Below, in pieces: positions 4,301 to 64,000 of a stretch of DNA of 64,000 nt. The translations under genes and the position numbers were made by a program. Below the pieces are notes generated by a model. It did not search any database, was not told the DNA's origin, and saw only the letters and a program-made list of their open reading frames with translations. The stretch comes from Chlorokybus atmophyticus (taxonomy: Eukaryota > Plantae > Mesostigma and Chlorokybus algae): NCBI GenBank assembly GCA_009103225.1, contig RHPI01003389.1, positions 496,001 through 560,000 of the forward strand, in the 5' to 3' direction. How positions within the stretch are numbered: position 1 is the stretch's first letter; each line of letters begins with the position of its first letter.

Positions 4301-7300
4301 CCAGAAGCCTCTTGTACTGGAACGTGTGGTGTCGGCCACGGCATACCCAACCACGTGGTCCTCCGTGTCAACCTGTTGGGAAGTTGTGTCGGCGCAAGTG
4401 TCCTCGTCTTTGGTGTGGTAAGCCAGATTATCATTGGATAGGCGCAGGAAGACGTCCTCAAGGGTGGTCATGGACACTCCGTAGCTGCCGACAGATAGCG
4501 CCTCGCGCTTGCCTTCAAGCTCCTCGAACAGAGCCGGGAAGGAAGCCGTGGCTGTGACGGGGATGGAGTAGGTGATCTCGCCGCTGTTGCTCTTCTTGCT
4601 CGTGTTGACGGCGGCGTCCCCAACGTGGCGCTGCACGAGGGCGGCGACGCCACTAACATCGGAGACCCCGGCGTCCCCGCGTGTAAGCGTGAGGGTGTAC
4701 CCAACGCCGTAACGTGACTTGAGGAAAAGGGAGCTCCCGCAGCAGCGCAGCTTGCCCTCACTCACGATGGCGATGCGGTCGCAGAGGATGTCCGCCTCGT
4801 CCATGTAGTGTGTGGTGAGCACGAGCGTGCGCCCGGCCTTGTACTTCTTCAGCAGCTCCCACATGGCGCGGCGCGAGTGCGGGTCCATCCCGCTCGTCGG
4901 CTCGTCCAGCAGGACCACACGGCTGTCGCCAATCAGCGCAATTGCCACCTGCAGCTTGCGCTTCATCCCGCCCGAGAGCGCGGACGCCTTCTCATCGAGT
5001 TTGTCCGTGAGTCCCACGCCCGCAGCGAGCTCATCCACGGCGGCATCCACCTTGCCACTACCCTTCATGCCCTTGATGGCAGCGTACAGCCGCAGGTGCT
5101 CCCTCACTGTAAGGTTGGAGAACAGGACGTTATGTTGCGGGCACACGCCCACATGCGACCGCGCGAGGGCAAGCTGTGCAACGATAGAGTGCCCATGGAT
5201 CAAGCAATCTCCCGCGGTGGGCGGCGTGAGACCCGTCAGGATCGAGATAGCCGTCGTCTTGCCCGCGCCGTTGTGGCCAAGCAGCGCTGTGATGTGGCCC
5301 GAGTATATGTTCAAGTCGAGGTCGTTGACGGCCACCTTTGCGCCGTACACTTTCTTCAATCCTTTCATGGACACGGATGGCGAGCCCCAACCCTCCGGCA
5401 CAGGCTCAAAGTCTGGATTGCTTGAGGCTGTGCCACCTGGGGAGGCCACCTCAACGTCATACCCGTCATCATCACGCACGCGCTCGTAGATGCCGTTATG
5501 GGCCTTCAAGCGGGATGAATTTGGCCACCAATACGACTTCTTGAACAGAAACAGAGGCGGCAGCTGCGCTCCATACTCGCTTGGCAACACCTTGTCCAAA
5601 TACCTGTACATGCACGCAAGCTTCATCAGATTGCAAGCACTCTCCAATGAGTTCTTGCAAGCCAGGACGACACGTGCAAGCCTTACCATGCGAGCGCCGC
5701 GTACAGGAATGTGTCAAACAGCATGAGCGCCATAATCCACGCGAGAGGGAACTCCGTCTCCCCGATATCCCTCCATGTCAGGCCAATGTCTGCACCTTCA
5801 TACTGCATACAAGCAGCTGAGTCAATACCAGCACCGCTCATGAGACCCTTCACAAGCAGTGGGAACCGCCTTACCTGCGCAAAGAGGTCCGCTCCAAATG
5901 TAAATGCTGTTGGGGAGAGCAGAGAAACGAGTGATTTGCCTGCGAGTGCCTGCGTGGATGCGGATCGGAAGAACAGGTAGCGCGGGAGTATGGAGATGAA
6001 GTGTATCATCGGGGCGGCAATGGCGGCCAGCTTGGCCTTGGAGAAGAAGGTGGACACCAGGAAGGCGAAGGGGATCTCGGAGATGGCGTAGAGGAACAAG
6101 AAGGCGAAGATGAGCGTCGGGGAGGAGTTGGGGAGGAAGGAGAACGTGACGAGGAGGGTGATGGCGAGCGTGGCGAGCATGAAGATCGCCACATACGTTG
6201 CCGCCCATGCCGAGTAGAACACCCACGTCTTCAGCCCCATGATCGCCATCGTCTCCTTCGCGCGCGTCTCCTTCTCCTCCACAATGCCCCGCACCAGCAT
6301 GGCCAGCGGGTACAGCGTGGATATGCACACAACAAGTCCAAGCAGCGGCCCAACTGCATGACACATGCAAGAGATGAAAAACAGAGTGCTGTACTGGGTT
6401 CAGAGTAACACACACGTTTACCCAGAGAACAAGTGAAGTCGCCCAACATACCTGCATCGTAGAAGAAGTTGTGTCGGTAGTTGCCGATGGGGAATGGTAC
6501 ACCCCAGACGGTGCGAGGAAGTAGGGCGGGGCCGCTGAGGATGTTGTTGTGCTGGTCCTGCGTAAGGATGGCGTCGTCCACAGCCCGCTGCAGGCTCAAG
6601 AACCCGCTGGTGTAGTACTGGCGGTAGTCGCGCCTGAGATCGTGATGCCAGCGGTCGATGGGTCGCCACGTGCGCGGCACCGTCGTGTAGTTCAACCTCA
6701 GGCTGTAATCCACTACGCCCTCATCCGCGCCGCCCAACTCGTTGAACACGACCACCGCCCATACCACTTCCCCGCCCAACGCGTAAGCCAGAGCCTCCTT
6801 CTCAGTGGCAAACTCCCCAGCGTACACCTCGTCGAAGAACACGCTCTGCTGTTTCATTGTGCCTGCAATGGACTGCACCCTCTCATCGTTCGGTACAAAG
6901 ACCACGCGCCCGAGCTCGAGGAGGTTGCCTGCAATACACGCCATGTGGTTAGCAAAGAGCACCATCAGTGCAGACATGTTAGCACTGACAGTGGTTGACA
7001 AGTATAATTGCAAACCGCTATACACCTGCAGAACTGTGAGTGTTAATTGCACGACAACACGGTTGATGGAAGGGTACTTACCAAAGAGGTTGCCAAAATG
7101 CTGCTGGGACCTGACCGCCTGATCAAACTTGCCCTGCGATCACACGCTCAAAATGGGTCATGCATGTGCATGTCTGTCAAACAACTTGTGCATGACAGCG
7201 TGCTGACCAAACCTGCGCCACGAGGATGGCCTTAAGAGCTTTGTGTAGCAGCACAAACGCATCGAGGGAAGGCACCGGCAGCGGCCCGTTGCTCCTTAAA

Positions 7301-9746: not shown

Positions 9747-12700
9747 ATGTCGCGGCCTGCGCCGGGAAGCCCTTCAGGAAGAAGTAAGCGAGCTCTGTGT
9801 GGTGACACTGTGCACCGATTTGTAATGTACACGCACGCAGCACCTTGCAGCTTGCATTGTGCAGAGGACTGAGCCAGTTGCCATGAGGTACAAAACTCAG
9901 CCGCGCATAGCACAGTCTCAGCAACCAGTCCGCACGCAGACAGCTTGATGCTGCCCTGTCAGCAAACTACAAATTCATCCTGCCTCTAGTAGATCAGCAG
10001 ACACATTGCGAATCCGACTGCATCACCATCATTAACACAAGCATCGTCATCGTCACCATCTGATTGTTGTAAAATCATGTTCTGTTCTCCCACCCCTGCA
10101 CCCAGATGGCACTCCCCCTCGCTCTCGCCAGTCTTCAACGACAACCACCACCCCATCGAGCTCCTTTGGCCTCCCCTCTTCCTCCTCCCCCAGCACGAGC
10201 ACGCTCTCCCGTCCCGGCCCCCGCCACCGCCTCTCCTCCTCGTGGGGTTCCGCGCAGGACGGGGCGTGGCTCAAGAAGGACGTGCGCGTGTGGGTGTTGC
10301 TGTTGGGAGTGGGTCAAAGAGGAGGAGGAGGAGAGAGTGGTGATGAGGGTGGAGGAGCAGCGCAGTGGGTTGGCGGGAGCGTGGTTGGGGTCGATGACGC
10401 CAGCGGGGCCGTGGGAGTAATGTTAGATGGTGAGGGTAAGAAGGTTGTGAAGTTGGACAGGAGCGAGGTGATGCCTGCCAACCCCCCCATGCTCGAGGCT
10501 GTCGAGGACCTGACCCAACTCAGCTTCCTCAACGAGCCGTCGGTGCTGCACGCGCTGAGGCTGAGATACGCCGAGGACGAGATATACACGCGCGCGGGAC
10601 CCGTCCTCATCGCGGTCAACCCGTTCAGGAAGCTGGAGCATCTCTATACAAGTGACAAAGCGGAAATGTACAGGGCGCGAGCGGAGGGGTCGGAAGCACC
10701 GCACGTGTTCCATACAGCGGACTCGGCCTTCCAAGCCATGATGAAGAGTAAGAGTGTGGTTGTGGCCTGTGCATGCACGTGTGTGTACGCAGGTGTGCGT
10801 GTCTGCATATGGGCGAACGCGTGTTCGTGAGAACATGCAAGCATGCGTGCATGTGCGCGCGTGTGCGTGTGCGTGCTTTTGTAAGAGAGCATGCGCACAT
10901 GTGTGTGCTGGGTCGTCAGCATTTCCTTTCCATGCAATACAAAGCTGACCTGACAGAGGACTGCACACAAGTGACATCTCTTTCGTGTTGCTTTGTGCAG
11001 ATGGAACCAACCAGTCGCTCATCATCAGCGGTGAATCGGGTGCTGGTAAGACGGAGACGGCCAAGATCGCGATGCGTTACCTTGCTTCTCTTGGTTCGAC
11101 GGACGGTTACAACGGCGGTGCGGCCCTCATCGAGGACGAGATCCTCGGCACCAACCCCATCCTGGAGGCATTTGGCAACGCCAAGACGCTGCGCAACAAC
11201 AACTCCTCGCGCTTTGTGAGTGCAGTGGTCTTTGGGTTGCTTCGCATGCTCTTACTCATTCGTCCGTCTCACACGAGAGTGCATTTGTGACAGGGTAAAC
11301 TCATCGACATACACTTTGACCCCGTCACCGGACGCATGGCTGGCGCCAACATTGAAACATGTGAGTGTGTGGCTCAACTCGCCCTTTCTTGTCAATTCGT
11401 TTTCCACACGAGCGTGAGGCTGTTTACGTGCGTGACGTGGCTCTGAACTCTCGTTCTGTTCCGTGCAGACCTGCTCGAGAAGGTAAGAGCGTCACAGGCG
11501 TTTGCACCGGTGTTGTGCAACAGGTATCAACAGAGGGTTGAAGCCCATTCAATTGCTAACTTTGTTTGCTTCGCTTGTTTTTGCGCAGTCGCGCGTGGTT
11601 CAGCAGGCTCAGGGCGAACGCTCCTACCACGTCTTCTACCAACTCTGCGCCGGCGCCGACACCTCCCTCCGCAGTAAGAAAGAGACTAGTGCTTGTGTGT
11701 GAAGCTTGTATGAGTCATGTACACATATCCATTAACAATCACCCCCAGGTTCGTTGCGTCTGCTCCCCGCCGAGCGCTACCGCTACCTGGACCAGTCCGG
11801 TTGCACCCGCGTGGACGGTACGGACGACGCGGCGGAGTTCGCTCTCCTGAGAGGGGCGCTGACGCTGTGCGGGATCGGGGAGGACGAGCAGAGGGACGCC
11901 TGGAGGCTGTTGGCGGCGATACTGTGGCTCGGGAATGTGGAGTTCGTGCAGAAGGAGGGGGATGAGGAGTCCGTACGCGCGGACAACGACGAGGGTGAGG
12001 GGCTGGATATAGTAGTACAGCGTGGTGGACCAAGTGATGCAGCGCAACACGCACACGAGCACAAAAACAAACACCCACACCCACGTGCATGCACGTATAC
12101 GCATACGCACACGCACACGTACACCGCGTGAGTGCACATGTGCGCACCCACTCTCCCCCTCCCCCTCCCCCTCACCTTTACCCTCACTCACCCTCACACC
12201 CCCGCAGCTCTCTCCACCGCCGCCTCCCTCCTCTCCGTCCCCCCCTCTTCCCTCGGCCTCGCCTTGACCGAGCGTCGCATCCACGTCCACCACGAGGTGG
12301 TCACCCAGCGCCTCCGCCTCGAACAGGCTCAGGAGTCTCGTGATGCTTTGGCGAAGGCCATCTACGCCGCGCTGTTCGGCTGGCTGGTGGATAGAGTGAA
12401 TAGAGCGCTCGCGGAGGGGAATAAGAAGAGGAGGACCGGGAGGACCATCAGTATACTGGATATATACGGGTTTGAGAGCTTTGCCAGGAATAGCTTCGAG
12501 CAGTTCTGTATCAACTATGCGAATGAACGGCTGCAGCAGCACTTCAATGGACACCTGTTCAAGCTTGAGCAGGAGGTGCGTGGGGGTGTGTAAGGGACGG
12601 TTGGCTTGGGGGTGTGGTTGGGTGGTAAATTGACACTGTGCGCGTGCAGGAGTACAGCAGGGAGGGCATTGACTGGACCAACATCGAGTTTGACGACAAC

Positions 12701-15156
12701 CAAGAGTGTCTTGACCTCATTGAAAAGGTGGGGACAAGTTTTGTCGTTGGGCGTGTGCATGTGCGTGCATATGTGAGTTCGCGAGCGTGTGTAGTCACAC
12801 AACCGCCACACGCAGAGGCCGCTGGGAGTCCTTTCTCTTCTTGACGAGGAGTGCGTGTTCCCCAACGGCAGCGACGCCTCCTTCGTCGAGAAGCTGTCTG
12901 CCAACCTTTCCTCCAATTCTCACTTCCGCGCCGACCCGACGGACCCGTGCGGGTTCCGCGTGGCGCACACGGCGGGGGACGTATGCTACGACGCGGAGGG
13001 GTTCCTGGACAAGAACAAGGATTTGTTACATGCGGATTTACTGGGACTCATTGCGGGGAGCGCGATGCCACTACTGCAGAAGATTGCAGCGGCACTCTCT
13101 GCCGCCGACACAATTGTGAGTGTGGGGATGTTGTGTCTCACCATGCTCACCCTCACAAACAACAAACTGAGTTGGGTACTGCAGGGCGCAAAGAGGGGAG
13201 CCAACGGGGCTGCAAACAGGGCCCCGAGCGTCTCGCAGATGCAGTCCGTGGGCTCCCGCTTTAAGGTAAGTTATTTTGATCACAGGATCGACAAACTTGT
13301 AACGATGCATAACGTGTGCCACTGTTTCAAACGCAACATTTCCCCCACCACAGGCTCAGCTTGCGGCTCTGATGGCTCGTCTCGACGCGACGGAGCCTCA
13401 CTACGTTCGTTGCATGAAGCCGAATGCGTTGCAGCGTCCGTCGCGGCTGGACGCGGGACTGCTGCTACACCAGCTCAGATGCTGCGGAGTCCTCGAAGTC
13501 ATTCGCATCTCACAACTGGGATACCCATCAAGACACGCACACACATTCTTCGCAGACAGGTACGGGATCACAACACACACCATGATAATCGTCACTATCA
13601 CCATCACTATCATTGACCCAACTTACTCGTATCACACACAGGTACTCTTTCTTGCTTCCTCGTGAGGTGGGTGGTAGAGACTCTGCGGACGTGTGTCGCG
13701 AGCTCCTTCGTCACTTCCGCATCCCCGCGGGGGCGTACCAGATGGGTCACACCAAGCTGTTCTTCCGGCCGGGACAGATGGGCATCATCGAGGACATGCG
13801 AGCGAGGACGCTCGCGGCCGTTGTCGTCATACAGAAGGAGTGGAGAAGACTGTGCGCGAGACGGGCGTACCTACGACTGCGCGCAGCAACCGTCTACTGC
13901 CAATCACGTACGGGGAGTTGGTGTTGTGTGCATGTGTATGTGCGACACCTGGCAGAGAGCAAGGTCTCACTGTATGATATCTGCGCACAGGTGTGAAGGC
14001 AAGGTTTGCGAGGCGTCGCTACGCGGTGCTTGTGAGGCAGCACCGCGCGAGCCGGGTTATTGGCCGTCACGCACGAGGGCTCGTTGTGCGCAGTCGGTAC
14101 CAACGGCTCCAGACAGGGGCTGTGGTGTTGCAGCGAGGTACGTACGTTGGTGTGTGTATGCGCATGCATGCGTGGGAAGGAGAGACATCGTGAGACACCA
14201 TGTGAACGTGTCTGTCTCTTCGTGCTTCAGCTTGGAGACGGCGGATTGCGAGGGTGAGAGCGAGGGAGGCCATGTTGAAGAGGAGGCAACAACAACAACA
14301 ACAGCGAGAAGCAAAGGACTCCACTCGCACCTCCTCTGTTCGTGCAGACACCCTCTCCGACAAGGAGAACAGCGCCCCGCGCGACGCCAACGTGGTGGCA
14401 ACGGTGCCCAGACCCGCGCAGCCCAAGGTCTTGACCCCCGCCGCCGCCAACGTCGTGGAGAAGGCGCCCGTAATGCATCATCAACACGAGGCGTGGGAGG
14501 CCGAGTCGCGGGCGCGTCTGGTGGCACGCGTGGAGGAGCTGGAGGCCAGCTGGATGGCGGGCACGGGGAGCGTCGGGCGCGCACTCGCCAAGGCCGCAGG
14601 CGCACTGCAGGACAACAACAACAACACCGACAAGACGGGAGCCAACGGACGCAAGGGGGGACACCATCCCAACACACGCACGTATCACCTGCTCCCGCCC
14701 GAGGCCGCCAACGATGCCAATGCAAAGGATCCCAATAACACGCACAAGGACACAAACCAAGAGCCGGGCACACCCGGTAAGACCCGCGACAACGCCATGA
14801 CTCCCATGCAGAAGTTGGCGGAGGAGTACGAGAGCAAGACCCGCATCTTCGACGACGACGCGGACTTCCTGGTGGAGGTGAAGGACGGCCGCTCCGTCGC
14901 CAACCTCGACCCGGACACCGAGTTCAAGAACCTCAAGAAGAGGTTCGACGCGTGGAAGAAGGACTTCAAGGCGAGGCTCAGGGACACGCGGGTCATGCTG
15001 GATAAGCTGGAGAAGAGCGGACACGCAGCACGAGGCAACTTGATGACGCACGCAGGAGGGGAGGCCAAGCTTAGCAACAATGCTCCTGCTGCAATGCTAG
15101 TGCCGGATAGCCCCACCACCGCCAAGAAGAAGAAGAAGTGGTGGGGAAAGTCATGA
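9747..15156 (+). CDS. Class VIII myosin heavy chain, multi-exon
   Basis: N-terminal SH3-like region ([10 protein letters not shown]...[25 protein letters not shown]), P-loop [51 protein letters not shown] repeats, and a tail ending [10 protein letters not shown] (WWG tail motif of plant myosin VIII). First exon 9747-9783 (GTAAGC donor, phase 1, joining the acceptor before 10106) is tentative. Confidence 0.92.
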
Positions 15157-15905: not shown

Positions 15906-16630
15906 CCGTACTTATCTGTATAAAAGCCCCCTGATTGTAAAAGGGGCTTGTATTCGTCGAATCCGGGNNNNNNNNNNNNNNNNNNNNNNNNNNNNNNNNN
16001 NNNNNNNNNNNNNNNNNNNNNNNNNNNNNNNNNNNNNNNNNNNNNNNNNNNNNNNNNNNNNNNNNNNNNNNNNNNNNNNNNNNNNNNNNNNNNNNNNNNN
16101 NNNNNNNNNNNNNNNNNNNNNNNNNNNNNNNNNNNNNNNNNNNNNNNNNNNNNNNNNNNNNNNNNNNNNNNNNNNNNNNNNNNNNNNNNNNNNNNNNNNN
16201 NNNNNNNNNNNNNNNNNNNNNNNNNNNNNNNNNNNNNNNNNNNNNNNNNNNNNNNNNNNNNNNNNNNNNNNNNNNNNNNNNNNNNCTCAATATGTGTAGA
16301 GGTAATACTATTGGTAAAAAGGCACCTGTGTATTCTTGACTTAATAAAACTCCATAGGGTCTGGATTACGCTAAATCGGCTAGCGTATTAAATTATGTTC
16401 ATTGTTGATTAAAGGTGATAAACACGTAATATAACCATACCTTAAGTGTAAGTCACCATTGGTTAATTACGGTGAGTTACACTCAAACATACATTTCCAC
16501 GTGTTTAATCCTATAGTGGAGAGGCACTATCTACGAGAAGGGGCCATAGTAGCACAGCCTAACAATGTGCCCCCTCGGAAATGAAAAGGGGGGTAATTGT
16601 TGTAGGGGGACTGTGACTAGGTAAATACGG
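15906..16630. mobile_element. Probable non-autonomous Tc1-mariner/pogo-type MITE spanning an assembly gap
   Basis: Imperfect terminal inverted repeats: CCGTACTTATCT...CCCCCT at 15906 versus reverse complement CCGTATTTACCT...CCCCCT ending at 16630, followed by TA. AT-rich interior; N gap at 15968-16285. Confidence 0.5.
15968..16285. other. Assembly gap (N run)
   Basis: N bases. Confidence 1.
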
Positions 16631-17231: not shown

Positions 17232-19166
17232 ATGGCCATGACGATGACGACCACGACCACGACGACCGCATCAGCAACAACAACAGAAGGGGATGTCCCG
17301 AGCATCGTAACTAAAGCGCTCTCGCCGTCGTCGTCTCCAGCGGCGCAGCACCAGCAGCATGCTGCGCTGGACGTGGAACCGGCGGAAGGGGATGTTGATG
17401 CCCGGCAGGAGACGACGCCGCCTACCACAGCCGTCACCGCTTCCAGCAACACCAGCTCCAGAAAGAACGCCGTCAAGTAAGCGAGCTGGTCGATTGCAGC
17501 GAGTACGTCGGTGGTGCACCGCGTGCAGCGGTTATCTTAGGGAGCGAAAACTTGTACACACGCATGCACGCCNNNNNNNNNNNNNNNNNNNNNNNNNNNN
17601 NNNNNNNNNNNNNNNNNNNNNNNNNNNNNNNNNNNNNNNNNNNNNNNNNNNNNNNNNNNNNNNNNNNNNNNNNNNNNNNNNNNNNNNNNNNNNNNNNNNN
17701 NNNNNNNNNNNNNNNNCGCACGCATGCGCGCGCATGCATCTCATCCCCCCCCCCACCCACACACACACCCACCCACACACACACACATGTGCACACGCAT
17801 GCACGCCTCCCCCACCACCACACCACCACCACCGCCACCACACACACACATGAAAGCACACGTGCGCGCATGCAGACGCACCCGCACCCATGCACACAGC
17901 GAGAGAGCAGCCGTGCATTAGCCCAGTCACTAAGCGCTCCGCTCTTGCGCAGGAAGTTCATTGTAGAGAATTTCATCCCGCTTGGTTTTCTGTTTGCGCT
18001 GGTGGTTGCGCTCGCGTTCCCTCAGCCCGGCCGCGAGGTGGGCAGCTGGCAGGTGGGTGGCGTGAAGGTGGTGCAGGCGGTGAACAACTTCCTGGTGTTC
18101 CTGGTGTCGGGGCTGACGCTGCGTTGGTCGGAGTTCCGGGCGCTGCGCGTGCATTGGCTCGGCGCACTCTATGGATCCGTCGCCATTCTCGCCATCACGC
18201 CGTGCCTCGGCTTCGCTACGCGATCGCTACCACTTAAGCCGACCGAGTTCGCCACCGGTGAGTGTGCGTGAGTGTGCTATGGTGTGTTGTGCAAGTGCTG
18301 ACACCCTCATGGATGTTTCTGATCTCAGGCTTGACTATCTTCACCACCGTGCCAACCACGTTGGGCGTTGGCGTGGCCCTTGTTGGTGCCAGCAAAGGCA
18401 ATCAGGTGAGGGCACGTAGTATACGCACGAAATTTATGCGCTCTGTTCTGTGGGTTTGGGGTGTATGTGCAACCCCTTATGGTTGTCATGCAAAGGTGCT
18501 GGCATTGTTCTTCACGATCGCCACCAACCTGCTGGGCATTGTGTCCGTACCTTACGAGCTGCGGCTGCTGCTCAACAACAGCACCGTGAGCGTCAACCCA
18601 GCGGACCTCGTTGTGAAGCTCCTGCTCACCGTCCTCGTGCCCACCGTCATTGGCAAGGTGCGGGTGTGTGTCGCTCACGCTCAAATAGTACTCAATGTTA
18701 TACAACTGATGTTTGTGCGCAGGTAGTGTGCAGCAACAGCGCGCGTGTGCAGTCGTTTGTGAAGCGTCGTCGTGTCGAGCTGAGCCTGTTCAGCAGCGCG
18801 AACCTCGTTTGCATCGTGTGGCAGACGCTGAGCGGTGCGCGTGACGTGCTTGTGCGCCAGGCCTTCACCCACATCCTCGCGGTGATCGGTTGCGCTGCGG
18901 CCGTGCACGTGGGCTACCTCCTCTTCAACGCGGGCGCAGTGAGGCTGCTGCGGCTGCCGCTCGTGGAGGCCATCGCAGTGGTTATCATGGCGTCGCAGAA
19001 ATCAGCACCCGTGGCTGTGACCGTCATATCGTATGTTACGACGGACATCGTGCAGCAGGGATTGCTGGCTGTACCCGCCATCGTTGGACAGCTCACGCAG
19101 ATATTCCTAGGAAGCGCACTCGCCAAAGTTCTCGCAAAACAGGTCGACAAAGAGTCGCGCGATTGA
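17232..19166 (+). CDS. Bile acid:sodium symporter family protein (BASS4/SLC10A7-like), multi-exon
   Basis: Exon 1 17232-17476 (GTAAGC donor) joins 17953 to give KKFIVENFIPLGFLFALVVALAFPQPG; also FLVSGLTL, TTVPTTLGVGVAL, TNLLGIVSVP and C-terminal SQKSAPVAVTVISY...IVGQLTQIFLGS. Intron 1 contains an N gap. Confidence 0.88.
17573..17716. other. Assembly gap (N run) inside BASS intron 1
   Basis: N bases. Confidence 1.
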
Positions 19167-54969: not shown

Positions 54970-55348
54970 GACGCCCTCGTTGCCGTCGCCTGCGACATGC
55001 GTGCATACAGTAAATTGGCCAAAACAATGTCTCTCCAACATGCTTATACTATGGATCCGAGGCGGCTGTCCTAGGCTAACACACAGGCTGTATACAGGCG
55101 CAGAATGGCATGCATGCACATAAACCCATCGAGAGATCAGTTCTACCGGAGCCTGAGGAGTGGTTGTGCTGTGCTGCCGCCTGCCTTGCCCCAATCCCTC
55201 TCTTGTGTGTGTTCAGAGTAGTAGAGTGAGCATGTTGGCAGTGAGCGTGGGGAAGCACAAGCAACATGGGTCACTGTTGACAACCTTGGGATAGTGATCG
55301 TGCTGGGCACAACAGCTATCTGTCTGCGTCCTCCTGTTTTGTGTTGCT

Positions 55349-58300
55349 ATGGACACCGACAACAGCATGCAAGATGCTTCAGGTATGTGCGTGTGCGCTA
55401 CTCTCCCAAGCAAATGGTCTGCAGCAGTTTTACTATGATTTTGCGCGCATATGAGTATCTGTTATTCACTGCATGACAGGCCAAGGGCGTGCGGTGCCTG
55501 TATCCGTGGCCGTGCGCCTTCGCCAGCGCGCCCACAGCAAGAAGAACAAGAAAGAGAAGCCTCCCTGCGTGGAGTGCTCACCGGACGCCGCCACCATCAT
55601 ATCCACGGGAGACGCCATCGCACGCAGCTCGTTCACGTTCGACTACGCGTTCAACCCAGAAACAATCACACAGGACATATTCCAAGTAAGTGGGCTTGCC
55701 ACATGCAACCCTCTATGACTACAGTGCCACAACTTGCAAACCGCCGCCACACGCCACACTGTGGCACGCGCGCACACGCACACGCACACGCACACGCACA
55801 CGCACATCTGTTGATGCCATCAGCCCATTGCTACAAGCCAAACCACTCTTACCATCTGTGCCTGTGGCTATGGCAGGCTTGTGTCCAGCCCCTCGTTGAG
55901 GCTTGCGTCAAGGACAACATTCATTCAGCTCTCCTCCTTCACGGTCCCGGCCGCATCAAGCGCGAGTTGGCTGGCCCCGATGGCCTCGCCGCTCTCGCCA
56001 TTGGCGCCGTGATGCAATCCGTGTCCGTGGGACTGATATCCTCCACCTGGTCCTCCTCTCCGTCCTCCTCGTCCTCCTCTAGATCCGTGCGGGCGAGCGC
56101 GGTGCGCGTGGCAGGACAGGAGATGAGTGATCTTGTATCTGGAGGGGGGCTGGATGGGGATGGGGCGGCGATAGCGCCAAGACCCAACGTGCCGGCTGTG
56201 AACTGGCCTGAGGGTGCGGAGGATGTTGTGGTGAAGGAAGCCAATGAGCTTATGGTGTTGTTTGACCGCGCCCTCGCCCTCCGCAAAGAGGTACAGCAGG
56301 ACCACTTTCACCAGCAGGTTCAGTGCACACAGACACTACCCCAGCAAGTCTGAGATGCATCTGACGTAGTAGTCCTCAAGCGGCGCACACGCACACAAGT
56401 GCATACACTCACGCACATGCACGCGCACACATTTACATAAAGGCGCACGCATGTGTGCGCGCACCGACAGACAGCACGTCACTTACCCTTCTCTCCGTGT
56501 GCACAGAAAGACACAAAAGAAGACAAGTCCTCCTCTGCACTGCTTCTGATAACAGTTCAAGTATGTTGATTGGCAGTACTGTAACTATGGCAAGTCAGCA
56601 GCCGCAACTCTCTGGTGTTGACTTGATGGTGTATAGGTGAGCAATGATGCCGGGACACGTGTTGGCACGCTGCTCATCGCCGACTTGGCAAGAAGGTGCG
56701 GGCATGAGGGTGCGATACAGTTTGCATATAACAGATGCCAATGTGTGCTCTCTGATTCCCTCTTTGCAGCGATTCTGAACCTGACAGCCACGACAACAAC
56801 ATGGCCGCCTTCAAAGACGTCATCAAACACCTGTCTGCCACGCGAAAAGCCACCACTGCCCCACCTTGTAAGCAGTTTATATCAATACTGTTACACGCAC
56901 ACACACACACACTCACCGCACGCTCAAACTCCCTCAGATGCGTCGTCCCCTCTCACTCTTCTTCTTTCCCACGCCCTTGGCGGTCCCTGCCGCACGCTGG
57001 TGCTGCTGCACGCCAACGCAGCGGCCAAGGCGCAGGCGGACACCATGGAACTACTGAGGTGAGGATTGAGAGTGCAGAAGAGTGTGACAGAGATAGAAGT
57101 GTGTGTGGGGGGGGTTGTGTTATTGAGTTCGTCGTGCTGTTTCAGGTTTTGTACCAGAGTCAAGCAGGTGATGAACTATCCGACTGTGAACGAGATCGCA
57201 AAGCAGGTAGGTTTGTGTTGATGTGCTGCAGTGAGCTTTCGTGTTGTTGTGTTTGAGCTGACTGTGCTGCGGCGATTGGTGAAGGTGCCTGCTCCGGGAG
57301 CGCTTGTGCCGTGCCCGATATGCACCGAGCCGCTCGATGAACAGGTGTGCATATGTGTACGTGTGTGTTTTTCTTTCTCTGAATGTGTGCGTGTTCGCGA
57401 GTGTATTATGTGATGGTGACTGACTGTTTTGGCTGTTGACAGGACATGCAGTTGACGCCCTGTGCGTGTGGTTACCGCCCCTGCCTCCTCTGCTTCGACA
57501 AGCTCATGACACAGGTAGCGTACCCAACACAAGCATCCAGGTGCTGCCGATGGCTATGTGTGCTCCTCTGATACCGACAATACTGCCACAGGGTGATGCG
57601 CGCTGCCCGTCCTGCCGCGCACCGTACGGCCTCCAACCCACGTTCAACGTCGACGCCAGCGATGTCGCGGAGAGGGCTAACCTCGTGCCGGAACGCATCC
57701 TGGACTCGCACCACCAGCAGGTGCAGTACAGTAGGGTACTCAGTTGACTACGTGCGTGTGCGCATGTACACATGTGTGTCTCCGTGCATACGTGCATGAC
57801 CCTCCTTGCTGTCCACAGGGCGTGACATACTACTTGCTAAAGTGGCGTGGGCTCAGCGATGCCGCGAGCACGTGGGAGCCCGAGGCTGCCGTGCGCGGCG
57901 GGACAGACGCCAGCACACTCATAGCCCAATACGAAGCCGCAAGAGCCGGTACGTTGTGGTTGGTAAAGTGTGTATGTGTCATGTTATACTGACTCGCACA
58001 CGTGCACACAGCCATGGTGCTTCAGCAGACCGGGAAGAAAGCCCCTCCTTCTCTCTACAACAGCGCCATCAACAACAACAACAATCCACACAACAACCAC
58101 CCGAGTGCAGTCTGGTACCCGCCCGAGCTCGCGGCAGTGAGCGCCATCAACCCGCACACGCTGCCACCGCAAGCATTCCACCATGGACCAATCTGGTAAG
58201 TGGTAGCTGAAGCCAACACAACATGGTATCAAACTGTTACACACATTTGTGTATGTGTGTGCAGGCGGCAGCCGGGTGCTCCCCCGAGCGCGATATCCGT

Positions 58301-61300
58301 ATCCGTGCTTCCACCAGCGCCGAGTGCTTTCATGCCTCCTCGCTCAGGTATCCACAATCAACACTACCCCAACAACACCAACACCCACGCCGCGCACGCT
58401 CTCCGGGTACAAGCCACATCCGGCTGGAGCAACATCGCCCCACCCAACCCCAACATGTATCAGACATCCATCATTGGCGGCACCATTCACAAGGTTGACG
58501 CATACGGTGGTGTTGGCGGAGGAGGAGGTGGGCCAGGTGGTAGCCGTGTGAAGGTGGATGACATCGATGACGGTGATGAAGAGGGTGGGAACGCGCGCAT
58601 ACTCACGGTGAAGAGAGCGATGCCCGCCTCGCTCACGGCGCCGTATAGAATAAGTCTCATGCTGCGGCTGGCGGCACTGATTGGATTTCTGTATTGGAGG
58701 ATTTCGAACCCAAACCCGGCGGCGTACGCGCTGTGGGGCATATCGGTCGCATGCGAGGTACGTGCGTGTGCGTGTGTACGGGCACGGATGTGGCAGTGTA
58801 TGCGTGCGTGCGCGAATGTGTGTGGCTTAGGCATGTATGCGACTGTATTTCCGCACCTTGTGACGCGTGCACTGCACGGGTCTATGAGTATGTGCGTTGC
58901 GCATGCTCACGCATGTGCAACGCACATACACGCACGCGTAAGCAAATTGACAGTGAGACACACTCTTTCTGCGTGACACACACACAGAAAGAGTGCATCT
59001 CTGTGCGTTTGTGTGCGCACATGTATGTCTCCGTCTGAATGTACATGTGGGCTTCAAACAGAGTGCTTGTTCCCAACCACTCCTTCCTTCTGCTCAACTC
59101 ATATCTCCCCTCCCCTGCCAGGTCTGGTTCGGCATGGCTTGGCTCCTCGACCAAGCCCCCAAGCTCTCCCCCGTCTACCGCGTGACCTACACGGACCGTC
59201 TCCCCCGCGACGCCTCCCTCCTCCCCGCCGTCGACATCGTCATCACCACCGCCGACCCGTCCAAAGAACCGCCCATCACGACCGCGAACACGGTGCTGTC
59301 GTGCATGGCGATGAGGTACCCGGCGGGGAAACTGGCGATATACGTCACGGATGACGCGGCGTCCAAGTGGGTGTTTGATACCATCGCGGAGACGGTGAGG
59401 TTTGCGAGGGTGTGGGTGCCGTTCGCGCATAGGTACAATGTGGAGCCGAGGGCGCCGGAGATGTACTTCAGCAACGTCAAAGGCGTACGCAGAGGAGGTG
59501 AGTTGCGTGCAAAAACTAGCATGACTGGCTCATATACTCACTGAGACACTGGCTGAGTCTCTCGCAGCAATACACCAATCCAAGCACGCACACCCACACA
59601 CTCACCCACCACCACACTCTCACCATCTCACACGCTCACTCTCACTCTTACTCTCTCACCCACACTGGACTCACTCGCTCACTCATCCACACGGTGGACC
59701 CACCCACTCACTCACTCTCTCACTCACTATGGTCTCACTCTCTGCATAACACTCCCCCACCCACCCACCCGACCCTCTCTCTCCCCCCCTGGCAGCCCCC
59801 TCTTCCCCCCGCGCCCGCGCCGAGCAGGACTCCGCCCGCCGCCTTGTCCACGCCGCCTACGACAAGTTCAAGTCCCGCGTCGCCGCTCTGGGCGAGCTCG
59901 CCAACGCCGCAGACAACAACGACTCCGACTACTACCAGGGGTGGCCGGGGAGGGACAGGAGGGACCACGACCCCATCGTGCAGGTGTTTCATCACCCGGG
60001 GGAGGATGAAGACAAGGACTGCGTGCTGCCGTATGTCGTGTACATCGCGCGTGAGAAGCGACTGGGATTCATGCACCACAAGAAGGTGCGTGCGTGTGGG
60101 CGTGTTGGTGTGCGCGTGCACGCAAGCTGCAGTTTGTGTGTACGCTTGTGTGTGTGGGTGACTTGCAAGCCCTTTACTCAACACACCCACCCCTACCCAT
60201 GCAGGCCGGTAGTGCCAACGCTGCGGTGCGCGCCTCCGCCCTCATCACCAACGGTCAGTTCCTGATGAACCTGGACTGCGACCACTACGTCCACAACAGC
60301 GACGCCCTCCGCGAGGCCATGTGCATCCTGCTCGACCCCGTCGTCGGAGACTCCATCGGGTACGTGCAGTTCCCGCAACGCTTCGACGCCATCGACAGAT
60401 CCGACAGGTGAGTCGGTGTTACCGTTGTTGTTGTTGTTGTTGTGTTGATGATAACTCTGTGGCACATCCACACTTGCAGATATGCCAACCACAACATTGT
60501 GTTCTACGAAGCCGGCATGAAAGGTCTCGACGGCGTGCAAGGACCGTTCTACATCGGCACAGGCTGCGTCTTCCGCCGAAAGGTGAGACACACACTGTGA
60601 CGCAACTTAACATACTGATCATGTCATCCCCCTACCCACACACACACACCTTGCAACAGGCCTTGTATGGTGCTACTCCCGACCACTTGCCCAAGTCTCG
60701 CGACTGCTTGTGTTGTTGTTGTTTCGGCGGCGGTCGTCGTCGCAAGGAGGAGGAGGAGCGTGCCAAGGCGAGGAAGAACGAGGCCGCCGCGCACGCCGCG
60801 GATGCGCACGTACTCGCTGCGGATCACCTCGCCATCGTACTCGCAAGCCGCACACGCGCAAACAACAACAGCAACTTCAACCAGGCGACACGCGTACCGA
60901 GCACAACGGCCAAAAGACTTGGACTCCTCCCGTCACTGGTCAGAAGGTACACACACACAACGTCACAACATTTGCGTGTCACACGCAATACGTGTGTATG
61001 TGCAAGCGTGCACATGTGTGCGTGTGTGTGCGTGCGCGTGCGCGCGTGTGCAGACGACATTGCATGCAGTCTTTCTGCAATACTGGGCGAGAACGCACGG
61101 CTCGACACGCACACGCACACGCATACGCACTCACACTCGCACTCTCTCCCCTCAGTGTCGCTCAAGTCGAGGGCAGCGCCCTCCCCAAGCCCTCCAAGCG
61201 CCGCTCCACCCTGGCCCCGATCCCCCCCCAGTCCCCTCGGACGGTGCTGACGGACGTCGCGACCGCCATCGCGTGCGACTACGAGGACCAGAGCGAGTGG

Positions 61301-63315
61301 GGGAAGGAGATCGGGTGGCTTTATGGATCAGTCACGGAAGATGTGGTCACCGGGTAGGGAGTGCGGGTGTGGGTGTGGGTGTGTATGTGTGCGTGCATAT
61401 ATGTCCAAGTCAACGTACACAATCATGGGCCAACTCTCATGCTTCTCAACTGTATGCGTGCGGACATGTATGTATATGTGTGTTTGCACGCGCACACATA
61501 CACGTGTTCGCACGCATATGGACCAAAGTACAAGTACATGCATGCGTATGCATGCACAACTGCAGACTCTCTTGCTACTACACACTCACAGGCAAGCTCA
61601 CACTCTCATGTGTACACTGTATCAACACTCCCCCGACGTTGTTCTCTCCACAGTTACCTCCTCCACTCCCGCGGTTGGCGCAGCGCCTACTGCAACCCCT
61701 CTCGTCCCGCCTTCAAGGGCACGGCCCCCATCAACCTGGCGGACCGGCTGCACCAGCTGCTGCGCTGGGCCACGGGCTCCGTCGAGATATTCTTCTCGAG
61801 GAGGAACGCGCTGCTGTGCGGGGGAGGGTCCAGACTCAAGTTGGCACAGGTGGGGGGAGGATGGATTGTTGTTGTGGACGTGCGTGCGTATGAGCGTGAG
61901 TGATTGTGTGTATTCCACTTGTGTTCATCAGCGCAAGCGCGTGTGCGTCTGTGCTCTCGTCAGAGTGTGTGCGCATGCGCGTGCACATGTCTGCGTGTGC
62001 GTATACGTTGGTGTGTGCGTGTGCGTGTGTACGAGCGATCCTGTGATACTCATCACTAACATCACCTCCGCAGCGTTTGGCGTACATCAACGTGTGCGTG
62101 TACCCCTTCACGGGCATCATCCTGCTTCTGTACACGCTGCTGCCTCCCGTCTGTCTCATGGCCAACCGCTTCATCATGCCTGCCGTCAACCTTGAGGCCG
62201 TCATCTTCTACCTCTGCTTCTTCCTCACGGTGTTCGCCTCGGCGCTGCTCGAGCTAAGGTGGTCTGGAGTCTCTATCGACGCATGGTGGCGCACGGAACA
62301 GTTCTGGATCATCGCTGGCATCTCCGCACACGTCGCCGGTAACACACCTTTGCTGATGAGACTCTCAAACATGCTTTTTGCATTCACTCTCACACATGCA
62401 GTGACACGCACACTTGTGCTCACGCTCATGGTGACGGTTGCACTTTGGCACAGATTGAGCGTGTATGAGAGTATGAGTGTGAGAGTAGGTTTCGCACTCG
62501 CACTCACACTTACTCAATGTGAATTTGTGGATTTGTACACTCGCACCGATGTCACGCTTGCACACATGCACAACCTCACGCTCACGGTCTCACGCTACGC
62601 AAAACTTGAGTTGCATCACACTTACGCTCAGCACACTGACACGCTTACGCTCAGCACTATGGTCCCCTCTCCAGGTGTAATCCAGGGTGTTATGAAGGCT
62701 GTTGCTGGTGTCGACATTGAGTTTCGCTTGACTGCCAAAGGAAACGAGCATGACGACGATGACTTTGACTCCACCAATCCGCGCGAGAACAGTGCAGAGC
62801 TCTACAAATTTAGGGTGGGTGTGTCTGTGAGTTGCGCAGTGAGACAGAGTGATGCTGCCATTGTTGACGTGGCGGTTGTGCCGACAGTTCACGTGGCTCA
62901 TTGTCGTGCCCGTCACTGTGATGCTGCTGAACATTCTTGGCATCGTTGCTGGCTTTGCCACGGCTATTACCGGAGGCAACTGGGGTGAGTAGTAGTCTCA
63001 ATCAAGGACCAGCTGGCCATCGGTGAGGTGTCTACAACCCACTCACATGCTGCGCTTACCTTTTCAGCGGAGCTGGCCGGCAAAGTCATCTTCAGCTTGT
63101 GGGTGCTCATCCACATGTACCCATTCGCCAAGGTGAGTCGTGCCTTCTGGCAGCGTGATGTCTCACACGCAAGGCAACATTATCAAAATGATTCCTTGCT
63201 GCAGGGCTTGATGGGCAAACGGAGCCGCCCGCCGACCATTGTCATCATCTGGAGTCTGCTCATCACAGTTGTGTTCGCCGGAGCATGGGTGCTGGTCTTC
63301 CGCAGAAACGATTGA
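55349..63315 (+). CDS. Kinesin-like motor / C4C4 RING / chromodomain / cellulose synthase-like (CSLD/CesA, GT2) fusion protein, about 1480 aa, 26 exons
   Basis: Exons: 55349-55382, 55480-55685, 55877-56290, 56507-56560, 56637-56695, 56770-56867, 56938-57058, 57146-57206 (kinesin); 57285-57344, 57443-57514, 57592-57720 (RING); 57819-57948 (chromodomain, begins in the previous exon); 58012-58195, 58265-58757, 59122-59497, 59796-60085, 60205-60407, 60480-60582, 60660-60946, 61156-61353, 61654-61849, 62074-62338, 62675-62814, 62888-62984, 63068-63132, 63205-63315 (linker and synthase). All introns are GT-AG and the phases match (4446 nt CDS). Synthase motifs: [30 protein letters not shown]. Confidence is very high for the synthase part and somewhat lower for the single-transcript fusion. 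Confidence 0.85.
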
Positions 63316-63492
63316 GCACCAGTGGCCCTTTACCCAAACCGTGTTGACGGGAAGCATGCTAGAGCATGCATTGTGCCTGAGTGTGGTGTTAAACCGTGTG
63401 CTGGACTGCTCACGAGAAGTGCGTCCTGTGATGACTCTCAAAAAACAAGTTGTTTGATATGCGAAATACACAGCTATGTGCGTCATAAGCCC

Positions 63493-63858
63493 NNNNNNNN
63501 NNNNNNNNNNNNNNNNNNNNNNNNNNNNNNNNNNNNNNNNNNNNNNNNNNNNNNNNNNNNNNNNNNNNNNNNNNNNNNNNNNNNNNNNNNNNNNNNNNNN
63601 NNNNNNNNNNNNNNNNNNNNNNNNNNNNNNNNNNNNNNNNNNNNNNNNNNNNNNNNNNNNNNNNNNNNNNNNNNNNNNNNNNNNNNNNNNNNNNNNNNNN
63701 NNNNNNNNNNNNNNNNNNNNNNNNNNNNNNNNNNNNNNNNNNNNNNNNNNNNNNNNNNNNNNNNNNNNNNNNNNNNNNNNNNNNNNNNNNNNNNNNNNNN
63801 NNNNNNNNNNNNNNNNNNNNNNNNNNNNNNNNNNNNNNNNNNNNNNNNNNNNNNNNNN
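63493..63858. other. Assembly gap (N run)
   Basis: N bases. Confidence 1.
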
Positions 63859-64000
63859 AGCCCCCCCCTGCACACATACTACTCACAGTCTAGTACGACC
63901 TCCATAACAAGTCTACCATATCTCCATTGCAGAACCATGAGCTGTGTGACAAGTAGCAATTCACCTAGTTGCATCCTTGCTTTCGAGGCGTGCATGTTGC

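What the first reader, a model, noticed from the sequence alone, without database searches (positions are those of the whole stretch)
55877..56695. The fused kinesin looks like a pseudo-ATPase
Seen: the P-loop GQTGSGKT is replaced by HGPGRIKRE (55940-55966), switch I SSRSH by KSSSAL (about 56525-56542), and switch II DLAGSE by DLARSD (from 56682). The helix-4/L12/helix-5 microtubule-binding face ([10 protein letters not shown]...[18 protein letters not shown]) is retained. Known: these motifs are required for ATP-driven stepping, and fungal class VII chitin synthases likewise carry a myosin-like domain lacking the nucleotide motifs. Inference: a static microtubule tether or diffusive guide rather than a motor, which suits an enzyme propelled by its own polymerisation.
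Basis: partly seen in the sequence, partly recalled or inferred. Interest (0 to 1): 0.75.

Follow-up and report, generated by a model that had tools for sequence, protein, structure and literature searches.

The report
Dead kinesin domain on cellulose synthase
In the early-diverging streptophyte alga Chlorokybus, a cellulose-synthase-like enzyme starts with a real kinesin-fold domain that has lost all its ATP-binding motifs, and also most of the classic microtubule-contact residues, so it cannot be a motor and is at best a weak, passive cytoskeleton or partner-binding module.

Summary
The window is Chlorokybus (JGI Chlat1). The stretch lies in exons 2-6 of gene Chrsp94S08346 (P0001, 1560 aa): kinesin-like, RING, chromodomain, CesA/CslD-like synthase.

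- **Kinesin homology:** residues 1-360 match Pfam Kinesin (E 5.6e-19), 134 solved kinesin chains, and the kinesin fold (Foldseek E 1e-19).
- **Dead pocket:** at the stated coordinates there is no Walker A (HGPGRIKRE), switch I is KSSSAL and switch II is DLARSD. No hidden motif exists in any reading frame.
- **Ortholog:** Mesostigma viride Mv02509 has the same four-domain architecture and is sister in a CesA tree (100/100). It keeps GETGAGKT, RFRP and DLAGSE. The fusion is therefore old, and the pocket died on the Chlorokybus branch.
- **Correction:** the microtubule-binding face is recognisable but not preserved. L11/helix-4 is 12 residues shorter and acidic, and the K252, Y274, R278, K281 and R284 equivalents are D, A, A, P and L. 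Mesostigma also lacks the last four.

"Pseudo-ATPase" is well supported. "Static microtubule tether" is not; weak microtubule contact, another partner, or a vestige all remain open.

No RNA evidence was available, and no paper found describes this fusion. The scan noted the same stretch before in an overlapping window of the same genome, not on other DNA.

The parts
55349..63315 (+). Whole annotated gene Chrsp94S08346 (P0001, 1560 aa, 25 exons): kinesin-like, RING, chromodomain, CesA/CslD-like synthase
   Evidence: P0001 was found with exon 2 at 100% identity and named by its source. Exons were mapped onto the window.
55482..57207 (+). Kinesin-like domain, seven exons: 55482-55685, 55877-56290, 56507-56560, 56637-56695, 56770-56867, 56938-57058, 57146-57207
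   Evidence: GT-AG borders and continuous frame. Pfam Kinesin E 5.6e-19. PDB kinesins. Fold match.
55506..55526 (+). Strand 1 and the N4 base-contact motif: VAVRLRQ, where kinesins have RxRP (Mesostigma has RFRP)
55940..55966 (+). P-loop remnant HGPGRIKRE (residues 102-110), with no GxxxxGK[ST]
   Evidence: AF2 pLDDT is below 50 at residues 105-114.
56519..56548 (+). Switch I remnant [10 protein letters not shown] (residues 223-232). The R-S-H of SSRSH is missing.
   Evidence: pLDDT is below 50 at residues 219-227.
56682..56773 (+). Switch II remnant DLARSD (residues 252-257), with Gly changed to Arg and Glu to Asp. It is split by the intron at 56696-56769.
56774..56839 (+). Shortened, acidic L11 and helix-4 start (SEPDSHDNN), followed by the retained C-terminal half of helix 4 ([13 protein letters not shown]). 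This region is 12 residues shorter than in kinesin-1.
   Evidence: Counted against the kinesin-1 numbering anchored.
56840..56984 (+). L12 and helix 5 ([25 protein letters not shown]), spanning the intron at 56868-56937. Equivalents of Y274, R278, K281 and R284 are A, A, P and L.
   Evidence: Ungapped match of exon 6 residues 3-36 to human kinesin 1bg2 residues 280-313. Also.
57309..57630 (+). CNOT4-type RING finger in three exons: 57258-57344, 57443-57514 and 57592 onward. The middle exon is missing from the annotated model.
   Evidence: zf-RING_4 E 1.9e-6 on the middle exon. The Mesostigma RING matches all three parts.
57685..57935 (+). Chromodomain (P0001 residues 410-460), two exons
   Evidence: Pfam Chromo E 8.7e-10. 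56% identical to Mesostigma.
58593..63315 (+). Membrane-spanning and catalytic CesA/CslD-like region with DDA, DCDH, TED and QLLRW present
   Evidence: Pfam Cellulose_synt E 6.4e-250. Motifs listed. Also.

Best explanation
The N-terminal 350 residues of this Chlorokybus CesA/CslD-like synthase form a genuine kinesin-fold domain. It descends from an N-terminal-motor kinesin that was fused to the synthase before Chlorokybus and Mesostigma diverged. On the Chlorokybus branch the nucleotide pocket was destroyed: no Walker A, no switch I Ser-Arg-Ser-His, and Gly to Arg and Glu to Asp in switch II. The domain therefore cannot bind or hydrolyse ATP as kinesins do and cannot step. That much is shown. 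The rest is inferred. The reading frame, all seven exons, the fold core and the helix-5/strand-8/helix-6 block have survived. This suggests the domain is kept as an ATP-independent structural or binding module on the cytosolic face of the synthase, next to the RING and chromodomain. The classical high-affinity microtubule contacts are also gone, and most were already gone in the common ancestor. Any microtubule contact is therefore probably weak or non-canonical, which would allow sliding rather than rigor anchoring. Alternatively the partner is not tubulin.
For: Identity and architecture. Kinesin homology and fold. Motif losses at fixed alignment positions. No cryptic motifs in any frame. The ortholog Mv02509 has the same four domains, with Kinesin E 1.9e-55 and GETGAGKT, RFRP and DLAGSE intact. 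The orthologous pair is supported 100/100 in the CesA tree. There is excess loss on the Chlorokybus branch: at 153 positions where at least 5 of 6 canonical kinesins agree, 36 are lost only in Chlorokybus and 16 only in Mesostigma (p 0.008). Pfam scores are 69 against 189 bits. The kinesin domain is 29% identical between the two algae, against 56% for chromo and 63% for CesA. The exons look coding: GC3 is 0.68 against intron GC of 0.53, with canonical splice sites. Microtubule-contact substitutions: with their importance taken from PMC5718755.
Against: There is no transcript or protein evidence. The only public run holding the stretch is low-coverage DNA. Both gene models are computational, and the Chlorokybus one has at least three local errors. 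With only two orthologs, no dN/dS test of constraint on the dead domain was possible. GC3 is lower than in the CesA exons (0.68 against 0.80), and a Ser-rich stretch sits in the helix-2 region; both could mean relaxed constraint. The AF2 model is of moderate confidence (pLDDT 62) from an 8-sequence alignment. L12 keeps R281/K282, so microtubule binding cannot be excluded. The canonical set used for the rate comparison is small and dominated by four related fungal kinesins.
Confidence: 0.7

Rival explanations
1. One reading: the domain is a rigor-like or diffusive microtubule tether whose helix-4/L12/helix-5 binding face is preserved, and it guides a synthase that is propelled by its own polymerisation.
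For: The domain has kinesin ancestry and sits on an enzyme family that follows cortical microtubules in land plants (own knowledge). The C-terminal half of helix 4, L12, helix 5 and helix 6 are the best-conserved part. L12 keeps R281/K282. Nucleotide-free kinesins bind microtubules tightly (own knowledge).
Against: L11 and the start of helix 4 are 12 residues shorter and acidic. The equivalents of K252, Y274, R278, K281 and R284 are D, A, A, P and L. K252, Y274 and R278 are the strongest alanine-scan positions according to PMC5718755. The L12/helix-5 changes are shared with Mesostigma. Kinesin-like domains without microtubule binding exist in plants, for example KAC1/2 (PMC3402901). A static tether would stall a moving synthase.
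Confidence: 0.2
2. The domain is a functionless relic in slow decay. It is carried along because it is in frame with an essential synthase.
For: Loss is accelerated on the Chlorokybus branch. Both the nucleotide and the microtubule motifs are lost. GC3 is lower than in the CesA exons. There is a Ser-rich stretch, and pLDDT is low in the loops.
Against: Seven exons remain open with canonical splice sites. Pfam significance is still 5.6e-19 and the fold is still recognisable. If the pocket had died long ago, unconstrained sequence would have lost this signal; however, the time of that loss is unknown. GC3 is well above the intron level.
Confidence: 0.2
3. Gene-model artefact: a kinesin pseudogene or a separate gene upstream of a CesA gene was wrongly joined by the annotator.
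For: No RNA evidence was obtained. The annotated model has local errors.
Against: The same kinesin-RING-chromo-CesA order occurs in the independently annotated Mesostigma genome. The synthase parts are sister at 100/100 support. The frame runs on through canonical splice sites, with only about 20 residues between the kinesin end and the RING. The kinesin exons contain no stop or frameshift.
Confidence: 0.05
4. The domain is still an active ATPase that uses non-canonical residues.
For: None beyond the retained fold and the Asp of switch II.
Against: There is no Walker A Lys/Thr and no switch I Ser/Arg, and the switch II Gly is replaced by Arg. All of these are required in P-loop motor ATPases (established knowledge).
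Confidence: 0.02

Closest known systems
Mesostigma viride Mv02509-RA.1 (P0012, 1734 aa), the ortholog
   Same: It has the same order of kinesin, zf-RING_4, chromodomain and Cellulose_synt. The synthase region is 58-63% identical and sister at 100/100 support. It shares the loss of the SSRSH serines and of the R278, K281 and R284 equivalents.
   Different: It keeps GETGAGKT, RFRP, DLAGSE and a full-length L11/helix 4. Its Pfam Kinesin score is 189 bits against 69. It has a linker of about 230 residues between the kinesin domain and the RING.
Fungal class VII chitin synthases (N. crassa CHS-7, A. nidulans CsmB) with a shortened myosin motor-like domain
   Same: A cytoskeletal motor-type P-loop domain is fused to the N-terminus of a processive GT2 polysaccharide synthase. 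[quoted passage not shown]
   Different: The fungal domain derives from myosin (actin system), not kinesin, and the enzyme is a chitin synthase, not a CesA-type synthase. The fusion arose independently in fungi. This is an analogy, not homology.
Plant KAC1/KAC2 kinesin-like proteins
   Same: They are kinesin-derived motor-like domains in the green lineage that have no microtubule-binding activity and were put to another use (PMC3402901).
   Different: KAC proteins are kinesin-14-like and free-standing, and they act on chloroplast actin. They are not fused to an enzyme. The state of their motifs was not compared here.
Conventional N-terminal-motor kinesins (kinesin-1, -2, -4, -5 motor domains; PDB 1goj, 2vvg, 7a40, 3zfc, 5zo8)
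   Same: The match is colinear over the full domain length, and the fold and neck-linker start (TVNE) are shared.
   Different: All nucleotide motifs and the main microtubule contacts are lost, and no coiled-coil stalk follows. The donor family is unresolved: the Mesostigma domain scores highest with kinesin-1, but only slightly (137 bits against 115-119 for kinesin-2 and -5).
Land-plant CesA complexes guided along microtubules by separate linker proteins (CSI1/POM2, CC proteins)
   Same: A CesA-family synthase has a cytosolic N-terminal RING-type zinc finger, and a possible link to the microtubule system.
   Different: In land plants the link is made by separate proteins (own knowledge). Here a kinesin-derived domain is part of the synthase polypeptide, and a link to microtubules has not been demonstrated.

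Membership tests
Kinesin motor domain superfamily (Pfam PF00225) | Significant match to the family profile over the domain | tested here: met
   68.7 bits, E 5.6e-19, cut-off 29.3. 134 PDB kinesin chains at E<=0.01.
Kinesin motor domain superfamily (Pfam PF00225) | Kinesin fold (central sheet flanked by helices, in kinesin order) | tested here: met
   AF2 pTM 0.70, pLDDT 62. The top 50 Foldseek matches are all kinesin motor domains, E 1e-19 to 4e-17, TM 0.60-0.74.
Catalytically active kinesin | N1 P-loop GxxxxGK[ST] | tested here: not met
   HGPGRIKRE occupies that position. The pattern is absent from the protein and from all frames of 55000-57400.
Catalytically active kinesin | N2 switch I NxxSSRSH | tested here: not met
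   The sequence is KSSSAL, with R-S-H missing.
Catalytically active kinesin | N3 switch II DxxGxE | tested here: not met
   The sequence is DLARSD, with Gly changed to Arg and Glu to Asp.
Catalytically active kinesin | N4 RxRP base contact | tested here: not met
   The sequence is RLRQ. Both Arg are kept but Pro is changed to Gln.
Catalytically active kinesin | Microtubule-stimulated ATPase or motility | not testable with these tools
   This needs recombinant protein.
Microtubule-binding kinesin head | Conserved L11/helix-4/L12/helix-5 contact residues (kinesin-1 K252, Y274, R278, K281, R284) | tested here: not met
   The equivalents are D, A, A, P and L, and L11/helix 4 is 12 residues shorter. 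The importance of K252, Y274 and R278 is taken from PMC5718755.
Microtubule-binding kinesin head | Actual binding to microtubules | not testable with these tools
   R281/K282 remain in L12, so weak binding is not excluded.
CesA/CslD-type GT2 synthase (PF03552) | Profile match and catalytic D, DxD, TED and QxxRW motifs | tested here: met
   E 6.4e-250. DDA775, DCDH944, TED1178 and QLLRW1218 are present.
Motor-domain-fused polysaccharide synthases (fungal class V/VII chitin synthases) | Myosin-type motor domain fused to a chitin synthase | tested here: not met
   The domain is kinesin-type and the enzyme is CesA-type. This is functional analogy only.

The most novel reading that the evidence does not exclude
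The earliest-diverging streptophyte algae couple a cellulose-synthase-type enzyme to the cytoskeleton directly, through a built-in kinesin-derived head. This would be an alternative to the separate CSI1-type linkers of land plants. In Chlorokybus the head would have become an ATP-independent, low-affinity slider that lets the polymerisation-driven synthase track cortical microtubules. Mesostigma would keep a nucleotide-binding version.
Probability: 0.25. Interest if true: 0.85.

Novelty: new variant of a known kind. Interest (0 to 1): 0.62.

Why it matters
How wall synthases became coupled to the cytoskeleton is an open question in plant cell-wall evolution. A kinesin-derived domain built into a CesA-type enzyme, conserved in both lineages of the earliest-diverging streptophyte clade, parallels the fungal myosin-chitin synthase fusions but has not been described. 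Neither genome paper mentions it, and no paper carries the gene identifiers.

The natural pair gives a ready-made comparison for asking what such a domain does without ATP turnover: Mesostigma with P-loop and switch II intact, Chlorokybus with the pocket destroyed. The practical correction is that the domain should not be assumed to bind microtubules, because the classical contact residues are missing in both species.

Tried and rejected
1. **RNA support.** The look-up of sequencing runs returned one run, and read laying showed it to be low-coverage genomic DNA. Its contigs lie on introns such as 56280-56504 and show no joints. Splicing therefore rests on sequence and the ortholog.
2. **Single exons against Pfam and PDB.** Exon 2 alone gave no kinesin hit. 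Exon 1 and exon 6 gave weak but colinear kinesin hits. The domain only becomes significant as a spliced whole.
3. **Word search with exon 2.** There were no relatives among proteins of 76-241 aa. The exhaustive search with exon 2 found only the gene's own product plus three low-complexity hits.
4. **Word search with residues 1-360.** It returned only weak ordinary kinesins (23-36% identity) and no other fusion.
5. **Hidden P-loop.** A P-loop in another frame or a missed micro-exon was rejected.
6. **Donor kinesin family.** This is not resolved. PDB scores favour kinesin-1 only slightly for the Mesostigma domain, and no reference set of kinesin families could be obtained for a tree.
7. **Mesostigma locus.** It is not in the contig collection.
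8. **Net charge and pI.** The values for the head (pI 7.8, against 6.8-9.3 for ordinary kinesins) do not discriminate and were not used.

Full report
**What is there.** The window is eukaryotic and intron-rich. The finding lies in a plus-strand gene whose exons I first built by hand. All seven exons of the N-terminal part have GT-AG borders and keep one frame. An exhaustive protein search with exon 2 returned a 1560-aa protein, P0001, that is 100% identical over residues 81-218. Its source names it jgi/Chlat1 Chrsp94S08346, from Chlorokybus atmophyticus. That strain is now called C. melkonianii CCAC 0220 (PMC11096116). Mapping P0001 back onto the window gives 25 exons between 55349 and 63315. 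Pfam finds Kinesin (E 5.6e-19 on residues 1-360), Chromo (residues 410-460, E 8.7e-10) and Cellulose_synt (E 6.4e-250). A CNOT4-type RING lies between the kinesin and chromo domains.

**Check of the observation.**
- HGPGRIKRE is residues 102-110, window 55940-55966.
- KSSSAL is residues 225-230, window 56525-56542.
- DLARSD is residues 252-257, starting at 56682 and split by the intron at 56696-56769.

The kinesin homology that gives these positions meaning is solid:
- 134 solved kinesin chains match at E<=0.01, the best being Giardia kinesin-2 at 1.8e-13, colinear over residues 61-349.
- Exon 1 and exon 6 on their own hit the N- and C-terminal ends of kinesin heads.
- An AlphaFold model (pTM 0.70, pLDDT 62) has kinesin as all of its top 50 Foldseek matches, with E 1e-19 to 4e-17 and TM 0.60-0.74.

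The conserved strands on either side (IHSALLLHG before the P-loop, LLIADLA before switch II) fix the register. No Walker A, SSRSH or DxAGSE is encoded in any frame of 55000-57400, so a missed exon or frameshift is not the cause. The alignments differ on whether the P-loop was substituted or deleted. The result is the same either way. RxRP reads RLRQ.

**The ortholog changes the picture.** A search with the synthase region found Mesostigma viride Mv02509-RA.1 (P0012, 1734 aa). It has Kinesin (E 1.9e-55), zf-RING_4, Chromo and Cellulose_synt in the same order. In a tree of 21 CesA-type sequences the two proteins are sister with 100/100 support, next to a second Chlorokybus paralog. [quoted passage not shown] The fusion therefore predates their split.

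The Mesostigma head keeps GETGAGKT, RFRP, DLAGSE and a full-length L11/helix 4. Its switch I reads HPDRAS instead of HSSRSH. The Chlorokybus pocket was thus destroyed on its own branch. Three measures agree with faster decay there:
- At 153 alignment positions where at least five of six ordinary kinesins agree, 36 are lost only in Chlorokybus and 16 only in Mesostigma (p 0.008).
- The Pfam Kinesin score is 69 against 189 bits.
- The heads are 29% identical, against 56% for the chromodomains and 63% for the synthase parts.

**The microtubule face.** They are recognisable, and the block from helix 5 to helix 6 is the best-conserved part. The residues that matter are not kept, however. Exon 6 aligns without gaps to human kinesin residues 280-313. 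That places P at K281 and L at R284. By direct extension through the conserved Pro-Tyr, it places A at R278 and A at Y274. Between switch II and the end of helix 4 the protein is 12 residues shorter than kinesin-1. What remains is acidic (SEPDSHDNN), with D at the K252 position. PMC5718755, summarising the classical alanine scan, names K252, Y274 and R278 as the positions that most affect microtubule affinity.

Mesostigma has Q, G, S and E at Y274, R278, K281 and R284. The L12/helix-5 contacts were therefore probably already lost in the common ancestor. Two basic residues (R281, K282) remain in L12, so weak electrostatic contact is not excluded. Kinesin-like domains without microtubule binding do exist in plants, as KAC1/2 show (PMC3402901).

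**Mechanism.** It is shown that this is a kinesin-fold domain without a nucleotide pocket, so it is not a motor. The rest is inferred. The frame, the seven exons, coding-type base composition (GC3 0.68 against intron GC 0.53) and the fold have all survived. The domain is therefore probably kept as an ATP-independent structural or binding module, next to the RING and chromodomain on the cytosolic side of the synthase. No coiled coil follows the neck-linker start; only about 20 residues separate it from the RING.

A rigor-type anchor has no support and would stall a synthase that moves by polymerisation (own knowledge). A weak sliding contact, a non-tubulin partner and a vestige all remain possible. 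The vestige reading gains some weight from three points: GC3 is lower than in the CesA exons (0.80), there is a Ser-rich stretch, and confidence is low in the loops. A second model, of the Mesostigma head from the same eight sequences, is somewhat more confident (pLDDT 73, pTM 0.78).

**Comparison with what is known.** The closest analogy is the fungal class VII chitin synthase. [quoted passage not shown] That is analogy, not membership. As a kinesin, the domain meets the profile and fold criteria and fails all four nucleotide motifs and the contact-residue test. The synthase part has all its catalytic motifs.

The Chlorokybus/Mesostigma genome paper reports three CESA/CSLD-like genes in Chlorokybus and none in Mesostigma. 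The other Mesostigma genome paper reports one CesA. Neither mentions a kinesin, and searches for the gene identifiers or for kinesin-CesA found nothing.

**Limits.** There is no RNA evidence: the one public run that holds the stretch is low-coverage DNA. Only two orthologs are known, no selection test was possible, and the donor kinesin family is unresolved. The set of ordinary kinesins used for the rate comparison is small and skewed. The scan had noted the same stretch in an overlapping window of the same genome. That note is not independent support.

Noticed in passing
window 57443-57514 (+): The annotated model P0001 skips a 72-base, phase-0 exon with AG/GT borders. This exon encodes the middle of the RING ([24 protein letters not shown]). 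It matches zf-RING_4 and the Mesostigma RING almost residue for residue, so the true protein is probably 24 residues longer here.
   Followed up: yes
window 58745-59062 and 62341-62660 (+): Compared with the Mesostigma ortholog, P0001 has two extra stretches. One is 16 residues near the second membrane helix. The other is about 62 residues after SAHVAG (residues 1339-1400). Both look like wrongly placed splice sites or a retained intron in the annotation.
   Followed up: partly
P0012 (Mesostigma viride Mv02509-RA.1): One genome paper states that Mesostigma has no CESA (PMC7027972). The other genome's annotation holds this CesA-type protein, 58-63% identical to the Chlorokybus one, and its paper counts one CesA (PMC6947507). 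The published statements disagree.
   Followed up: partly
P0012 residues 360-370: The Mesostigma head has an intact P-loop and switch II, but switch I reads HPDRAS instead of HSSRSH. It may bind nucleotide and yet be a poor ATPase.
   Followed up: partly
window about 10900-14900 (+): A myosin-type head (P-loop GESGAGKTE near 11000) is encoded in several open stretches. It was not examined.
   Followed up: no
window about 1400-7140 (-): Long open stretches look like an ABC transporter (two nucleotide-binding-type regions). They were not examined.
   Followed up: no
window 55740-55805, 56380-56470, 56885-56925: The introns of this gene carry (CACG/CA)n-type simple repeats. Read laying skipped these as repeats.
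   Followed up: no
window about 15930-16290, 17575-17900, 63490-63880: Runs of N (assembly gaps, 829 N in all). The last one lies just downstream of the gene's stop at 63315.
   Followed up: no
P0093 (Closterium sp. NIES-64, 2266 aa): Another CesA-type protein with an unusual added module (protein kinase domains plus zf-RING_4). It could be a real fusion or a merged gene model.
   Followed up: no
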